64,000 nt of DNA from Klebsormidium nitens. Lineage: Eukaryota > Plantae > Klebsormidiophyceae. Numbering within the stretch: position 1 is the stretch's first letter; every line of letters starts with the position of its first letter. This document shows positions 3,159 through 15,715 of this stretch, in pieces. The stretch is from contig DF237158.1 in the NCBI GenBank assembly GCA_000708835.1, forward strand, positions 62,001 through 126,000. The letters are read 5' to 3'. Below the pieces are notes generated by a model. It had not been told where the DNA came from. It searched no databases and saw nothing but the letters and a program-made list of their open reading frames with translations. The translations under genes and the position numbers were made by a program.

Positions 3159-4627
3159 CTAGTTTGCCTTAGGTATCTGGTATGCAGCTTGCCCAATGAG
3201 CCAGCGCTCTGGCACGTGGGACATGGCCAGCACGACCGCCACGAGGGACAGCACAGCCAGGGCCGCCACCCACCAGGAGCGGCGCGGGATGCCGAACTCA
3301 AGCTCCTCCAACTCTGCCGAAGAGACGAAGGGTCAGGGCATAATCGCTTGGGCTAGAGAAGCACCCTCCTTATGTTAAAACCTCGTTCTAACCGCATTCG
3401 ATATAAGCAAGGCGTTCTGCACTGTTTCAACCAGAGCTGCAACTTGTAAATGATGTCCAACGGCAGATCCTCTGGCCGCATAACTGCAACTGAAGCACAC
3501 AAGTCATTTGAAGAAACGTCTGAAGCATGAGAGTGTGAGGCACACGTTAACTCTCAGCAATCGAATTGATGCACAAAAGCAAAGCATGCGGTCCCACCTA
3601 TGTTGAAGATTGCCGTTGTTGGGGGCTTGCGTCCGCCCACCACCAGCCCTAGAGGCTGTACTGTCACTAGGATCGCAGCCTGCACGGGTACGGCCCCGCG
3701 CTGCACCAGACACAGGGATCAAGGGTGATCGCAGCAGCAACCTGTACAGTAGCTTGCCGTTCTTTTTGGCTACCAAACAGACCAACTTACTGGTTCCAAT
3801 TGTTTTCAGCAGGAGAGTCCGCAGCCTTCCTGAGCTGGCAGCCAGTCTTTCTTGGAGCCGTCCGGAGTTCACAGGACACTCACCAGCGGCCTGCCCGAGT
3901 CATCCGTTGTAAATACCAGCTTCTCTGTGTCCAGGAGCCGCCTCCTGCCAGCCCTGGTATCTTCACGCTCCTCACCTACCAGTTCAATGTGATATGTTGC
4001 AGGAACCTGCGCACTTGGCAGAAAAGCATCAGTATAGTCAAGAGCACTTTGCGTTTAATCCTAATCACCGGTTATCGGCGGTGGTGATACTCTGAGCTTC
4101 ACAGCTGTCTGAACAATTCAATACTCAACCTGGCCATAAACATCCTAATGAGGAAAGTGCTTGCTAGTGCCCCCAGAACACCAACAATACCCGAAGATCA
4201 ACAGGGGCATCACAAACCTGGCAATGCGTTGTGAGGGACAAAGATGTGTGCGGCGCCCACCGTGCCTGGGAACGAAATCTTGACTTCGTAGCCCTGTTGC
4301 TTCTTCAAGCCCTTCAGCTCATACAGCGCTTGGCCCCCAGACATTGGCAGCTCCACCTGCTGCAGAGGCACGCCAGCTTCAAGGCTGCTCCTCGTATCAT
4401 ACTGCCTGCACACAGAAGCAGAAACGGCTGACCCCAATGGCGGTACTTATGAAAGACAAGAATTGCATGTTCTCAGAGCTCTGCATTGCGCGCTGCTGAC
4501 GAGTCGATGTCTTGAATCCCTCTCATCATAGAACTTCTTCTCACCTGTCTGGCTCAAGCACCTTTGCTAGAGCAAGGGAATTTGCAAGGAGGAGCAGGAG
4601 CCACGAAACTCTTTCGAGGGCGCCCAT
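3159..4627 (-). CDS. Small secretory-pathway membrane protein (195 aa; signal peptide + C-terminal TM), plant-conserved uncharacterised family resembling fungal Pga1
   Basis: Five GT-AG exons (4627-4545, 4405-4261, 4006-3884, 3679-3598, 3313-3159) sum to 588 nt in frame: MGALERVSWLLLLLANSLALAK...LYELKGLKKQQGYEVKISFPGTVPATYHIEL...RRLLDTEKLVF...AAILVTVQPLG...IFNIELEELEFGIPRRSWWVAALAVLSLVAVVLAM...*. The YEVKISxP and RRLLxTEKLxF motifs are recalled from plant proteins. The Pga1 link is from memory and unverified. Confidence 0.75.
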
Positions 4628-5010
4628 TAAAGCACAAGACTTCCAACTTGCGCAACCACAAGAACTTCCAACTTGGCGGGGAAAGGTCACATGCAGCATG
4701 CCTGCATAGGCCTGAGGTCGAAGAACCAGGAATGTTCAATCTTTCGAAAAATGCTTCAAATTGAAGGCAGGTTCGGCATATCCTGTGAATTAGCAGTGCA
4801 GACAACAACTGCCGTCTCCGGCCGTGGGAATACACGGCACTCTTGCTCCGTTCAAAGCAAGGGCGACGCTTTTATCGCCGTCAATAGTACCGGTTTCTTG
4901 GTGCTTGCAACCTACACAGCGGATATAAGAGACCGCAAATGCCCTCCATTTCCCTTTCTTAGGTTTAACAGCCAGGTGCGCTGCACCAGCAAACATGGCT
5001 GAGCTGGCCC

Positions 5011-5036
5011 CGGCCCTAGGCCTGGGCCTGGGCCCA
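5011..5036. promoter_or_regulatory. Cluster of site II-like motifs (TGGGCC x2, plus GGCCCA) in a divergent promoter
   Basis: cctgggcctgggcccatg at 5021-5038 lies between the head-to-head ATGs at 4627 (-) and 5285 (+). TGGGCY is the plant site II/TCP element. Function is inferred. Confidence 0.3.
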
Positions 5037-5284
5037 TGCATGATCGAGGGCCATGACACAGACAGACAACTTACCCTTGCGCAAAATTAGCAGCTGAAGT
5101 GGGCGTAAGAAAGAGACTTTCTACTCATTCTTGTCAGCTGGCGTCTGGTGCCAGCTCCTTCAATCGCTTAATTACGTGTTGCTCGCTACAAAATTTGCAA
5201 TTGGAGGACTGAGCAGCGAAGGTGGTGCATCACTGAGCTTCCAGACCGTTGCTCACCCTGTGCCGGTATCGCATTGTCACAAAG

Positions 5285-8200
5285 ATGACCTTGTCTCTTC
5301 AATTGCCAGATTGGAGCAGCACCACCTGGCTCACAGCCTTCATTGGTGTCATATCCGCCCTGCGGCTTACGTACTGGCAGTTTTTTGTGAAAGATAATGT
5401 GATAGCTGTGGAGAAGGCAAAGCAGGGCGTTCCCAGTGCGGCAGACAATGGCGGTGTCCCTGCTGGACCAAGGGGGTGGCCCTTGGTTGGGAATCTGCTG
5501 ACTCTGGGCCATGAGCCGCACCGGGCGCTGGCGGACCTTGCGCAAATGTGAGTCTGCGGGCTTCTCCATGTTGCGGAGGGCAGTCTTGCTGCCGACCCAC
5601 AACTGTTTGAGCTGGAGACAAATCATCTTGTCAGGGACATATAATGCTGCCTCGCTTCTAGAGGCAATTAGTTGGCAAGTGGTTAGCTTATCTGATTGCA
5701 ATTCTACTGACATCTGCTGGACTGTCTATCCCTTTGATCCTGTTCCGGTTTCTGCAGCTATGGGGACGTCCTTCAAGTGCAACTGGGGGCCTTTCCAACG
5801 CTGGTGGTGTCAAGCATGAGCCTTGCTAAAGAAGTCCTTGTGAAGCAGGTGAAGAGCAGGCAACATCAGATAGAAGCTTCCAATAAAACCTCATCTATAG
5901 TGCCTTGTTGTGTAGTGTTTGATTACTTGACTGGTGCTTAGTGTAGAGTTTTTGACAAGGAACCTCCATGGTGGCACAACTATTGAAAGGATGTTGCAAA
6001 CTCTGTGCACATGTGCTGATATGTTCCAAGGACAAAGGCAATCCAGCCTGACATTTTAAGAGAGTCTCGTATCTCCTGCCCAGTGTGCTGACACCTGTCA
6101 CTACCACCGCCTGGTCCAGGCTGCTCACTTTGGAGCTGCGGGAGAGCCCATTCGCATCGTGGAGCTTGGCCTTGGTTGGAACAGGCCCCAGCTGGCTGCT
6201 AAGCGCGGGGCAGCCAGAGCTTTAGTGCTCAGCCAGGCTCTCAGCGGGGCTTTCAAGAGCGCACAAACAGCAGGACTTGTCAGTAAAGCAATCCACGAGG
6301 TCTCCGAAGAGCTTGTGACCACAGTCAAGGAAGAGCTGGGGGATGCGGCAACAAACAATAAGTCCGGAAATCCTCAGATTACAGGACTGAGGAGCCTGCT
6401 GAGGCGCGCAGCACTCAATGTTTTGTTGAAAGTGGCATTTGGGGTGCGAATAGCGGGAGACAGCTGGCAGCAGGAGAGCGGCGGCCAGCCTGGGCAGCCG
6501 AGTGGGAGCGTGGCGATGCTGGAGGTGATTCTGAGCGAGATGTGGCAGCTGGTGAACAACCCCGTGCTGGCGGACCATGTGCCCCTCCTGCGGCTGGCGA
6601 CCGGCGCGCTGACCACGCGCTGCAGGTTCCTGGCCAGGCAGCGGGACTGCATACTACGCGACCTGGTGGGGGGGGCCAAGAAAGCACGAGAGCAGGCGAG
6701 TAGCGGGGATGGAAAGTTGGGGAAGAGTTTGAGGAGGGCAGAGTCTTTGCTGGACGCCCTTCTGGCGGGGCAGGAGACGAGCGGGCTGACGGATGGGGAG
6801 GTGGCGGATGTGCTGGCAGACTTCGTGCAAAGGGGCGTCCTGCCTGTGGCAGCGACGGTGGAGTGGGCCTTGGCCGAGCTGACGAGGAATCCGGAGGTGA
6901 GGGCCGCAGCGAGCAACGAACCTGCACTCCTTGACTCGATGCCAGCGCTGGTAGAAAAGCGACGGCGGCACTCTTGCTGTGGCTGCTGTAAGAAACCTGC
7001 TTTCTTGGAACACGTGTGCGTTCTTACTGCCTGGTCGCAGTACGTTCACCTTTCCATACCTTGCGAGGACATGCCATGTTACCCGTTCGAATTTGCGTCT
7101 TTCCCTCTTTTCCGCTAGCCAAGGTAGGTGTTTGATTCCGGACGAGCCTTCTCCTGGACAAGACAAGGGCACGGAGCGACACTCCCTGCATCCGTTGCTT
7201 TTTCGACTTTATTCAATGATGAGACTCGATGTACCTCTACTTATTCCAACATCGTTAAGAAATGTGTCAAAAGCGCTTTCCTTCCCTATACGCAGATACA
7301 GAAGAGGCTGAACCAAGAGCTGGAGGTTGAGGTCTTTGGCAAAGGAGGCGACGTGCCACGGCAAGCCTTGGCGCGAACGCCGCTGCTTAGTGCGATCATC
7401 CTGGTAAGCGTCTAAAGTTGACGCTCGAGGCTGGACCTCATCATTGACGCAGGTATAGACTGATCAAAGCTCGCAGGTTCCGCCTCTTGGAAGGACTGCG
7501 GAAGACAATCTACGTGCACAATTCGTGAGCGGCACGTCCACGACTGTCCACTGGACGTTGAAGCGTTCGTTCGACAGTTTGTAGGACTCCTTTTCTAGTG
7601 AAAGCAGATTATCAATCTTCAGTACCTCAGACTTCGAGGACTTCTGCAGGAGAACTTTCCGAAGCCGCTCAGATACCCCTGGACCCCTTGTTCGCAGGCC
7701 TTCCCCTCGCCAGCGCACATGCGTGATTTTACCCGCTTGTACCTTATGTGACGTCGTGTGGTGTGCTGTGCTGTCCAGGAGACTCTGCGCTTGCACCCCA
7801 CCCAGCCTCTCTCCCGCCCGCGTCGAGCCGCGGAGGATGTGCACATTGACGGCTACCGGGTGACAAAAAGACAGAACGTCGTCATCAACACGTGGGCCCT
7901 CGGCCGAGATGCACGGTATGCTGCAACATCCCCGCAAATCTGCTCTTCTGCCTTGGTTTTGACAATGAAGTTGACAATAGCTGGGGGCGCCTGACTGCAA
8001 AGAACACGAGCGTTCTCAGATCCACGAAAGCAGGGGTTCACCTTGGACCTGGTGCACGTCATTTGATGTGTCCCGTCAGGTGCTTATAATCTGACAGAGC
8101 CGCGATGTCCATCAGAGTGCGCCAACAGCCCCTGGTGCACACTGGGAAGCCCTGGCTTGCCAAATTGAGAGTAGTCGCTGCCGGCGTTTTCTGCTGACAT

Positions 8201-8501
8201 CACCAGCCATGTTGCTCTTGTTAGGTTGTTCCGGTCTGCCTCCGACTTCGTCCCGGAACGCTTTTCCCAAGGCGCCTTGTCGACTCTTTTAGACGCGAAA
8301 GACTTGTACTGGAGCTCCTTGCGGGTCGACGAAACGGACGTGTTGATAGACATAGCAGCCTACTTTCTTGGGGTCCTTGTCCGAGGTTTCGAATGGCTGC
8401 CTGGATTGATGCACGAATCGCGGCTGTCATTGCAAGAAAGTTCAGGGGTCGAGGTCTCCGAGTTGGTGTCAGCCGTTGCTCCCTGCGCAAAAATTCGGTA
8501 G
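5285..8501 (+). CDS. Cytochrome P450-fold protein (A-type/CYP71-clan-like, 550 aa) lacking the heme-thiolate Cys motif
   Basis: Six GT-AG exons (5285-5547, 5758-5848, 6120-6896, 7296-7403, 7779-7915, 8225-8501) total 1653 nt in frame. Present: N-terminal anchor, hinge PAGPRGWPLVGNL, YGDVLQVQLG, TVEWALAEL, ETLR, NTWALGRD, PERF, FEW. The I-helix reads RGVLP instead of AGxDT, and there is no FxxGxRxCxG. Confidence 0.9.
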
Positions 8502-9585
8502 CACTCATTATGCTTCCTACAGAAACTTGTACTACGGGTTGGGTTGCCTGTACAAGCGCAAAGGTCACATTCCTATTTGCGAATTGATTTACGCATTATG
8601 CTAAAATACATATGGTGCAACTAGTTGCCCCTGCCAACAACTGTCGAGTGATTCACTGTTCGAAAGAACTGTCACCTTCCCGTTCATTGATCAACGACTG
8701 TGCAGCAGCTGATCCGGTTCGGTTCGCATCACGATCGAGTCTGCATGCATCAAGGCTAGGCCGGTCAACAATCAATGGCGACAACCTTGGAAGTTTTTCT
8801 CAAAGCTTGCGCGCCATCATCGAAAACCAATCCAACGATCTATGAGCATTTAATCAATAAGCACGGACCCGGCAATTATACTTTTATAGCGTGCCATGCT
8901 GTTCATGAACAGATGATGCAGATGATATCCACATTGCCCCACCCGGGTATCTTTGCATGAACAATCCGCGAAATGAATGCCAGACGTGCATGCAGCCCGG
9001 TGACGATCTCGATCGAGCTACATGCAGCCTAGATCAAGGATCAGTAATGATTGAAATTAAGTGTCGAATCATCGAACAAGTTTCTACAGTGGAATTGGGA
9101 TACTGTTAATTCGGCTTACTTAATCATGGCACGTGAATTTATGACAAAACCACGATTTGATCAAAGAGAACATCAAAACATGTCAACACGTGGTGCTTCA
9201 AATCATTTAACGCTGATCGTGTCAGTGTCTTCTTCAAGCTTTGAACCTGCTCATGCACCGGGCATGCACAAGTCATTCAAATTTTGATATGGACTAAACA
9301 CTCCAGCATGCACTGATTTCCGGACCACCTGCTACAATAAAGTAAGAGTATAAACGCACTCCACTGCTATACATGCGCGGGCTTGACTCGAACCATTTTG
9401 CGTGCACGTTCGGAGTCTAACTATCGTACGCGGTACATCGATGTGAACGGGCTGAACATGTCGCTGGTGCAACGTTGCGCTTGATCTACCAACGTCAAAG
9501 ACCTTGCACTTTGAATCACGCGGCGTAGGGACGCGTTGGTTCACCGTTTCTCGTTTGTGCAGCCAATTCTTGTGTTCGCATGACT

Positions 9586-15715
<6,130 letters not shown>

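What the first reader, a model, noticed from the sequence alone, without database searches (positions are those of the whole stretch)
5285..8501. Intact full-length cytochrome P450 that has lost both the heme-ligating cysteine and the catalytic I-helix threonine
Seen in sequence: six canonical exons give an uninterrupted 550-aa ORF retaining the structural motifs (Pro hinge, ETLR, PERF, terminal FEW...R). The segment where PFGxGRRxCPG belongs reads LYWSSLRVDET (8304-8336); counting back from FEW places Val at the Cys position. The I-helix AGxDT reads RGVLP (6831-6845), and the C-helix WxxxR appears as LAAKR. Established knowledge: the Cys thiolate is essentially invariant in P450s, and the I-helix Thr is needed for O2 activation. 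Inference: concerted loss of the heme-chemistry residues with the fold, splice sites and frame kept is the pattern of a maintained pseudo-enzyme (scaffold, ligand sensor or dirigent-type partner) rather than a decaying pseudogene.
Basis: partly seen in the sequence, partly recalled or inferred. Interest (0 to 1): 0.78.

Follow-up and report, generated by a model that had tools for sequence, protein, structure and literature searches.

The report
Conserved cysteine-less P450-fold protein in Klebsormidium
This alga makes, and has long kept under selection, a membrane-anchored protein with the full cytochrome P450 fold but without the cysteine, threonine and several arginine/tryptophan residues that hold and work the heme. 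It is therefore most likely a re-purposed, heme-free relative of P450 enzymes and not a dead gene.

Summary
Six GT..AG exons (5285-8501, + strand) encode a 550-aa protein identical to the annotated K. nitens protein P0001. The P450 fold is kept (Pfam PF00067; AF2 pTM 0.86; TM 0.86 to CYP76AH1 and C4H). ExxR, PERF, the N-terminal anchor and the Pro hinge are kept too.

The FxxGxRxCxG heme loop is replaced by KDLYWSSLRVDE, which has no Cys. The I-helix AGxDT reads RGVLP. The B-C-loop Arg and C-helix Trp that bind the heme propionates are also gone.

- **Transcripts:** contigs from four studies join all five introns exactly as modelled, with no differing letters. One carries a poly(A) tail. No alternative last exon was seen.
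- **Orthologues:** copies in K. subtile and three other Klebsormidium-like sources have the same substitutions, intact frames and the same intron positions.
- **Selection:** dN/dS is 0.24 (0.18-0.32) and 0.18 (0.12-0.24). Exons show no indels, while introns are scrambled.

The replaced segments are among the best-conserved parts of the protein. An exhaustive search found no close relatives elsewhere; the next hits are canonical CYP71-clan P450s at 26-40% identity.

Best reading: a maintained heme-free P450-fold protein with a new, non-monooxygenase role. Heme held by a non-thiolate ligand is not excluded. Cys-less P450 homologues are known in bacteria and in fungal fusion proteins, so this is a new variant of a known kind.

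The parts
4970..5284 (+). 5' UTR (transcript contigs start between about 4970 and 5074)
   Evidence: table 8: the contigs begin at 5045-5074, or run about 30 nt beyond 5000
5285..5547 (+). Exon 1 (CDS aa 1-88, phase 2). Holds the hydrophobic N-terminal anchor (aa ~15-35, 5327-5389) and the Pro hinge PAGPRGWPLVGN (5459-5494)
   Evidence: junction 5547/5758 seen in 4 runs
5758..5848 (+). Exon 2 (aa 88-118), beta-1 region; 100% identical in L001
   Evidence: Pfam p450 E=0.028
6120..6896 (+). Exon 3 (aa 119-377): B-C loop to I/J helices. Includes FGAAGEP (6129-6149), where the propionate-binding Arg is replaced, and the degenerate C-helix stretch (6207-6233)
   Evidence: (p450 E=6.5e-9)
6831..6845 (+). 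I-helix RGVLP in place of (A/G)Gx(D/E)T. RG[VA]LP in the four orthologue sequences that cover the I helix
7296..7403 (+). Exon 4 (aa 378-413), J/J' to K helix
7779..7915 (+). Exon 5 (aa 414-459, phase 2). ETLR (ExxR) at 7779-7790; beta1-4 'PR' is kept
   Evidence: (p450 E=1.6e-10)
8225..8501 (+). Exon 6 CDS (aa 459-550 plus stop). PERF at 8253-8264; replaced heme loop; L helix; FEW at 8388-8396
8298..8333 (+). KDLYWSSLRVDE (aa 484-495) where PFGxGRRxCPG belongs. It has no Cys and no Gly. The pattern KDLYWSS..VD is invariant in five lineages
8502..8710 (+). 3' UTR, up to the poly(A) addition site seen in one run
   Evidence: tables 7 and 8 (run X5: loose end of 25 A at 8710)

Best explanation
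The gene encodes an expressed, ER-anchor-bearing protein that keeps the complete microsomal P450 fold. It descends from CYP71-clan-like P450s but no longer binds heme through a thiolate, and most likely does not bind heme at all.

On the stem of a Klebsormidium-restricted lineage, several things changed. The Cys-pocket loop was replaced by a shorter Gly-less, Cys-less segment. The I-helix oxygen-activation motif became RG(V/A)LP. The propionate-binding Arg and Trp of the B-C loop and C helix were lost. After that the new sequence was frozen by purifying selection, and the replaced segments are among the most conserved parts.

I infer that the former heme and active-site core was rebuilt into a new, selected structural or ligand-binding feature. 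On that reading the protein works non-oxidatively at the ER membrane, as a binding, scaffolding or activating partner or a small-molecule binder. This is analogous to the heme-free P450-derived glycosyltransferase activators (EryCII/DesVIII) and the Cys-less P450-related domains of fungal PpoC and CcDOX1.

Shown here: the gene model, expression, the fold, the residue losses, conservation and selection. Inferred: absence of heme and the non-catalytic role.
For: - **Gene model and transcripts:**
- **Fold:** Pfam p450 on exons 2, 3 and 5. PDB phmmer hits down to 8e-36, all ending before the heme loop. AF2 pLDDT 83.5, pTM 0.86. Foldseek TM 0.86 to CYP76AH1 and C4H.
- **Residue losses against 40 canonical relatives:** B-C-loop Arg, C-helix Trp, the I-helix A/G, D/E and T positions, and the PFGxGRRxC loop. 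R492, the only candidate for the loop Arg, is G in L002 and Q in L003, so it is not constrained.
- **No alternative thiolate:** the only Cys conserved in all four full-length orthologue sequences is C286.
- **Selection:** omega 0.24 and 0.18 with CIs below 0.32. The I-helix segment has omega 0.05-0.12. Exons have no indels; introns are scrambled.
- **Conservation of the replaced parts:** the heme-loop block has 12/15 invariant positions and the I-helix blocks 11-12/15, against a mean of about 8/15.
- **Tree:** the clade is monophyletic (support 1.0). Its stem of 2.05 substitutions per site is the longest internal branch (median 0.15). The crown is short, at 0.23-0.79.
- **Precedents for heme-free P450 folds with non-catalytic roles:** PMC3391682, PMC11703216, PMC9579011.
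Against: - No biochemical measurement of heme content exists.
- ExxR, PERF and the beta1-4 'PR' Arg are kept. These are usually said to stabilise the heme core, although EryCII also keeps the I, J, K, K' and L helices.
- Invariant Ser489, Ser490, Asp494 and Tyr487 lie in or next to the loop before the L helix. Any of them could in principle be a non-thiolate axial ligand, as in bacterial ncCYPs.
- High conservation of the former active-site segments fits a new catalytic site as well as a binding site.
- No partner protein or ligand is identified. The conserved head-to-head neighbour gene has no recognisable family.
- No model coordinates were available, so I could not check whether Arg356 or the acidic VDE residues fill the heme cavity.
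Confidence: 0.65

Rival explanations
1. It is still a hemoprotein, a eukaryotic 'non-canonical CYP'. A non-cysteine residue of the remodelled loop (Ser489/Ser490, Asp494 or Tyr487) ligates the iron, and the remodelled I helix supports a chemistry that needs no O2 activation, such as isomerase-, peroxidase- or P411-like reactions.
For: Bacterial P450 homologues with Ser, Glu, Arg or other residues at the axial position exist, and one Ser-ligated member binds heme (PMC11703216). Y487, W488, S489, S490, V493 and D494 are invariant in all five lineages. The ERR triad (ExxR plus PERF) and the beta1-4 Arg are kept. The former active-site segments are under the strongest constraint.
Against: Three independent heme-contact elements are lost together: the B-C-loop Arg (40/40 in canonical), the C-helix Trp (38/40), and the loop Arg, which is unconstrained (G or Q in L002 and L003). 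The small A/G residue that packs on the distal heme face is an invariant Arg. All Gly residues that shape the Cys pocket are gone, and the loop is 3-5 residues shorter. The loop is modelled with low confidence (pLDDT ~65).
Confidence: 0.22
2. It is a transcribed unitary pseudogene that happens still to have an open frame.
For: The residues regarded as essential for P450 chemistry are missing. Isolated Cys-less P450 predictions in angiosperm genomes look like pseudogenes, for example P0112, P0129 and P0133.
Against: The frame is intact in all three genomic copies that span the whole gene (window, L001, L002), and in the three exons held by the partial contig L003. Exon lengths are identical or differ by multiples of three, and intron positions are conserved. 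Omega is 0.18-0.24 with tight CIs, even though synonymous sites are saturated against L002. There are no exon indels, while introns are scrambled. The 'lost' motifs are replaced by invariant new sequence.
Confidence: 0.02
3. It is an annotation or assembly artefact: the true mRNA uses another last exon or reading frame that supplies FxxGxRxCxG.
For: The +1 frame of exon 6 reads LELLAGRR, which resembles FELLPFGAGRR.
Against: Four independent transcript assemblies match the genome letter for letter and use only the modelled junctions. The alternative frame has no Cys after GRR, scores -1.3 bits against a heme-loop profile, and reads GCRQ in L002. The K. subtile transcript encodes the same Cys-less C-terminus.
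Confidence: 0.02

Closest known systems
Plant CYP71-clan (A-type) microsomal P450s, e.g. CYP76AH1 (5YLW), CYP73A33 C4H (6VBY), CYP75 and CYP98; also animal CYP1A1
   Same: These are the best sequence and fold matches (26-40% identity, E to 1e-56; TM 0.86). They share the N-terminal membrane anchor, the Pro hinge, ExxR, PERF and the FxW after the L helix.
   Different: The algal protein has no FxxGxRxCxG loop, no Cys, no I-helix acid-Thr pair, no B-C-loop Arg and no C-helix Trp. It sits on the longest internal branch of the tree.
PDGAF / EryCII-DesVIII-type P450-derived glycosyltransferase activators (bacteria; PMC3391682, PMC11703216)
   Same: A P450 fold kept without the axial Cys and without heme, with a non-catalytic partner role. 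In EryCII the I, J, K, K' and L helices are conserved while the C and C' helices are lost. Here too the C-helix region is the degenerate, poorly modelled part.
   Different: Those proteins are soluble actinobacterial proteins of the bacterial P450 type, encoded beside their glycosyltransferase, with an extra N-terminal helix. The algal protein is ER-anchored, CYP71-clan-like, and has no identified partner. The loss of Cys is independent, with no close sequence relation: no EryCII-type chain appears among the 60 best PDB matches shown.
Bacterial non-canonical CYPs (ncCYPs; Nguy et al. 2024, PMC11703216)
   Same: Conserved families of P450 homologues with another residue, or none, at the axial position. 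Some families have no predicted ligand.
   Different: They were reported from bacteria only. At least the Ser-ligated member still binds heme. The algal protein has additionally lost propionate-binding residues and the small distal I-helix residue.
P450-related C-terminal domains of fungal PpoC / CcDOX1/2 dioxygenases (PMC9579011)
   Same: Eukaryotic P450-derived modules that lost the Cys (and His) of the heme signature yet are retained. They appear to be needed for folding or stability of a partner domain.
   Different: Those are domains fused to a heme dioxygenase. This is a stand-alone protein with its own membrane anchor, in a streptophyte alga.

Membership tests
Cytochrome P450 superfamily (PF00067 fold) | Sequence and fold homology to P450s | tested here: met
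   Pfam p450 on exons 2, 3 and 5. 127 PDB P450 sequences at E<=1e-3. AF2 model TM 0.86 to 5YLW and 6VBY.
Cytochrome P450 superfamily (PF00067 fold) | ExxR and PERF (ERR triad) | tested here: met
   E414, R417, P469, E470, R471 and F472 are kept in Kn, K. subtile, L001 and L002. L003 reads PGRF.
Cytochrome P450 sensu stricto (heme-thiolate enzyme) | Axial Cys within FxxGxRxCxG | tested here: not met
   No Cys in aa 297-545. The loop columns are unmatched in any frame. The Cys column is a gap or non-Cys in both alignments. The same holds in five lineages.
Cytochrome P450 sensu stricto (heme-thiolate enzyme) | I-helix (A/G)Gx(D/E)T(T/S) for O2 activation | tested here: not met
   RG(V/A)LP in the four orthologue sequences that cover the I helix.
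Cytochrome P450 sensu stricto (heme-thiolate enzyme) | Heme bound; 450-nm reduced-CO spectrum | not testable with these tools
   This needs purified protein. The residue evidence (B-C Arg, C-helix Trp and loop Arg lost or unconstrained) argues against it.
CYP71 clan | Groups with CYP71-clan families in phylogeny | tested here: inconclusive
   All named nearest hits are CYP71-clan members (CYP75, 76, 98, 71). The tree held only those hits and no other clans as outgroup, and the stem is very long.
PDGAF (EryCII/DesVIII) glycosyltransferase activators | Cys-less, heme-free P450 fold | tested here: inconclusive
   Cys-less is shown. Heme-free is inferred only.
PDGAF (EryCII/DesVIII) glycosyltransferase activators | Close sequence kinship to the actinobacterial family; encoded next to a partner glycosyltransferase | tested here: not met
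   The nearest relatives are eukaryotic CYP71-clan P450s, and no EryCII-type chain is among the 60 best PDB matches shown. The conserved neighbour gene has no glycosyltransferase (or any other) Pfam match. The rest of the window was not scanned for glycosyltransferases.
Fungal DOX-P450-related fusions (PpoC type) | P450-related domain fused behind a heme dioxygenase domain | tested here: not met
   The transcript encodes only an N-terminal anchor plus one P450 fold, 550 aa.
Pseudogene | Disrupted frame, dN/dS near 1, loss in relatives | tested here: not met
   Frames are intact in every lineage. Omega is 0.18-0.24. There are no exon indels.

The most novel reading that the evidence does not exclude
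A eukaryotic, ER-anchored P450-fold protein whose rebuilt core (invariant Arg356 on the I helix; invariant Tyr-Trp-Ser-Ser...Val-Asp in place of the Cys loop) forms a genuinely new active site. Either heme is held by a natural Ser, Asp or Tyr ligand, or another cofactor or ligand occupies the former heme cavity. This would be the first non-thiolate 'P450' enzyme outside bacteria.
Probability: 0.2. Interest if true: 0.85.

Novelty: new variant of a known kind. Interest (0 to 1): 0.62.

Why it matters
The axial cysteine is treated as obligatory for P450s. A recent survey found it in more than 99.5% of homologues and described the exceptions only in bacteria (PMC11703216).

Here is a stand-alone, membrane-anchored, plant-type P450 homologue in a streptophyte alga. 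It lost the cysteine, the oxygen-activation motif and the propionate-binding residues together. Yet it is transcribed and has been held under purifying selection long enough for synonymous sites to saturate. The replaced segments are the most conserved parts of the protein.

That makes it a clean natural test case for how a P450 fold is re-used once heme chemistry is abandoned. It is also a caution for annotation: it is labelled 'CYP1A1' in the public record, and it would be counted among the roughly 29 K. nitens P450s used to infer which oxidative pathways existed before land plants.

Tried and rejected
1. **Frameshift-fossil idea.** The +1 frame of exon 6 reads LELLAGRR, like the canonical FELLPFGAGRR. 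I built a profile of the PERF-to-FxW segment from 40 canonical relatives and scored all three frames of exon 6 in four loci. The alternative frame scores -1.3 bits, has no Cys, and becomes GCRQ in L002. It is a by-product of the conserved in-frame WSSLRVDE, so the idea is rejected as unsupported.

2. **Second P450 or donor copy in the window.** None was found.

3. **Fragment-based orthologue alignment for a profile (A1).** MAFFT misplaced the fragments, so I discarded it and used P0001 alone for the exhaustive search.

4. **Identity of the conserved head-to-head neighbour.** Its single exons gave no Pfam match, so it gives no functional lead.

5. **Literature searches for plant or algal Cys-less P450s, or for this gene.** I found only bacterial and fungal precedents, plus papers on another K. 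nitens CYP98-like gene, kfl00035_0080.

6. **Earlier notes of this scan.** None concerned this gene.

7. **Model coordinates.** They are not exposed, so I could not check cavity filling or an Arg356-Asp494 contact.

8. **ESM Atlas look-alikes.** The search returned only ordinary P450 clusters.
Full report
**Observation**

The region 5285-8501 (+ strand) holds six exons with canonical GT..AG borders: 5285-5547, 5758-5848, 6120-6896, 7296-7403, 7779-7915 and 8225-8501. Together they give 1653 nt, which is 550 codons plus a stop. The translation is identical to a database protein annotated in Klebsormidium nitens as 'cytochrome P450 family 1 subfamily A polypeptide 1' (P0001).

RGVLP is aa 356-360 (6831-6845). 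LYWSSLRVDET is aa 486-496 (8304-8336). No other P450-like sequence lies in the window.

**Is the heme machinery really missing?**

Four independent tests say the heme loop is gone.
- Pfam's p450 model matches exons 2, 3 and 5 but not exon 6, which normally carries the strongest signature.
- phmmer against all PDB sequences finds 127 P450s. The best is sugiol synthase CYP76AH3 at 8e-36, then CYP1A1 at 5e-35. In the alignments printed and in most of the 60 rows shown, the match ends at aa 473-488, just after PERF.
- I aligned the protein with 40 full-length canonical relatives, built a profile of the PERF-to-FxW segment, and scored all three frames of exon 6 in four loci. Only the PERF end and the L-helix end match, and only in the coding frame. 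Columns 16-40, the heme loop, are unmatched in every frame.
- Two different alignments place SSLRVDE opposite PFGxGR and then delete RxCxG, or else delete PFG and the Cys column.

Either way there is no Cys, none of the loop glycines, and the loop is 3-5 residues shorter.

Column counts against the 40 canonical sequences:
- B-C-loop Arg: 40/40 in canonical, becomes A or M here.
- C-helix Trp: 38/40, becomes A or S.
- I-helix A/G: 38/40, becomes Arg.
- I-helix D/E: 35/40, becomes Leu.
- I-helix T/S: 37/40, becomes Pro.
- ExxR, the beta1-4 P-(H/R) and PERF are kept.

The only Cys conserved in all four full-length orthologue sequences is C286, in the G/H-helix region. The C-terminal C546 is not conserved. 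That stretch aligns ambiguously and is modelled with pLDDT below 50.

**Fold**

An AlphaFold2 model built on 72 sequences has mean pLDDT 83.5 and pTM 0.86. It shows the P450 helix and sheet order. It also shows an N-terminal helix at 12-46, an unusual helix at 478-487, a short low-confidence loop at 488-492, and an L helix at 493-513. Foldseek puts CYP76AH1 (5YLW) and sorghum C4H (6VBY) on top, with target-normalised TM 0.86.

**Expression and gene model**

Runs from seven studies hold the stretch. About half of the sampled words are held, which equals the exonic share. I laid contigs from four runs of four studies on 5000-8900. Each has 1.4-2.1 kb contigs that skip exactly the five modelled introns. 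These contigs carry no differing letters and no indels, including across 8280-8340. One ends in a 25-A tail at 8710. Only low-depth fragments cover the introns.

The tool labels these runs 'RNA?' as a guess. However, GT..AG skipping and a poly(A) tail identify the contigs as transcript-derived. No alternative junction was reported.

**Relatives**

A word-based search and then an exhaustive HMMER scan of 1.84 billion representatives found 16,649 P450s, but only one close group. That group is:
- P0003, a complete 550-aa Trinity transcript of Klebsormidium subtile, 83% identical.
- L001, a Logan contig from SRR23617307, 82% identical.
- L003, from SRR23617210, holding exons 4-6 only.
- L002, a JGI metagenome contig, 61% identical.

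I rebuilt the gene in L001 and L002. Both have six exons, the same phases, and canonical splice sites. Exon lengths are 263/91/777/108/137/277 in L001 and 266/91/768/108/137/274 in L002. Both have intact frames of 550 and 547 aa. The upstream, divergently oriented neighbour gene is conserved in both, which supports orthology.

RG(V/A)LP is present in the four sequences that cover the I helix. KDLYWSS..VD is present in all five lineages. No lineage has a Cys in the loop.

The next-best hits are canonical CYP71-clan P450s of land plants, at 26-40% identity. Among the 150 best, the few others without a recognisable motif are truncated, keep the Cys in a variant motif, or look like one-off pseudogenes.

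**Selection**

Nei-Gojobori dN/dS values:
- K. nitens against L001: 0.24, with dS 0.42 and bootstrap 95% CI 0.18-0.32.
- K. nitens against L002: 0.18, CI 0.12-0.24, with dS about 1.6, which is saturated.

Fisher p values are 8e-26 and lower. The I-helix segment has omega 0.05-0.12. Exons are 82-89% identical in nucleotides with zero indels over 1653 nt. Introns are 35-59% identical with many indels.

Among four full-length orthologues, the block LDAKDLYWSSLRVDE has 12/15 invariant positions and the I-helix blocks 11-12/15, against an average of 8/15.

In a maximum-likelihood tree with 40 canonical relatives, the four sequences form a clade with support 1.0. Its stem is 2.05 substitutions per site, the longest internal branch (median 0.15). 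Distances within the clade are only 0.23-0.79. So a long or fast stem was followed by a slow crown. One caveat applies: no nearer algal P450s were in the tree.

**Interpretation**

The pseudogene and artefact readings are excluded for practical purposes. The protein is a maintained P450-fold homologue that cannot be a heme-thiolate monooxygenase.

I judge complete loss of heme most likely, at about 0.65. Three separate propionate contacts are lost or unconstrained: the B-C Arg, the C-helix Trp, and the loop Arg, which is G or Q in L002 and L003. An invariant Arg replaces the small residue that packs on the distal heme face. The glycines that shape the Cys pocket are gone.

The former core is nonetheless the best-conserved part. 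That points to a rebuilt, selected feature and not to mere relaxation.

By analogy with EryCII/DesVIII (PMC3391682; heme lost, C helices lost, I-L helices kept, acts as an allosteric partner) and the Cys-less P450-related domain of CcDOX1/PpoC (PMC9579011; apparently needed by the partner domain), the most economical mechanism is a non-oxidative binding or partner role at the ER membrane. This step is inference.

The main rival, at about 0.2, is a non-thiolate hemoprotein like the bacterial ncCYPs (PMC11703216). The invariant Ser489, Ser490, Asp494 or Tyr487 would be candidate ligands.

**Novelty**

Cys-less P450 homologues are documented in bacteria (PDGAFs and 20 ncCYP families) and as fused domains in fungi. 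I found no report of a stand-alone, anchor-bearing, plant-type example, nor of this gene. It is therefore a new variant of a known kind. On present sampling it is restricted to Klebsormidium-like algae.

Noticed in passing
window 3159-4404, minus strand (exons about 4258-4404, 3878-4009, 3596-3706, 3159-3329): A head-to-head neighbour gene, about 0.9 kb upstream of the P450-like start codon, is conserved in the same order and orientation in L001 and L002. It ends in a predicted C-terminal transmembrane segment (…RRSWWVAALAVLSLVAVVLAM…) and has conserved motifs GYEVKISFPG and RRLLDTEKLVF. Its single exons have no Pfam match. It may share a bidirectional promoter with the P450-like gene.
   Followed up: partly
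window 8306-8326, +1 frame of exon 6: The alternative frame reads LELLAGRR, resembling the canonical heme-loop FELLPFGAGRR. It is not significant against a heme-loop profile (-1.3 bits) and not conserved in L002 (GCRQ). It is explained by the conserved in-frame WSSLRVDE.
   Followed up: yes
window 9544-10757: Further conserved coding-like blocks downstream of the gene are shared with L001 (8337-9641) but not with L002. They were not identified.
   Followed up: no
window 6807-6848 and 6840-6890 (aa 348-375): The I-helix stretch DVLADFVQRGVLPVAATVEWALAEL is identical in K. nitens, K. subtile and L001, and differs at 3 positions in L002. It is the slowest-evolving segment (omega 0.05-0.12) despite having lost the catalytic motif.
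   Followed up: yes
window 6795-6860 region; aa 226-246 (window 6441-6503): The F-G-loop region is a Gly/Gln/Ser-rich, poorly conserved, low-pLDDT insert (AGDSWQQESGGQPGQPSGS). It sits where canonical P450s have substrate-recognition sites 2 and 3.
   Followed up: partly
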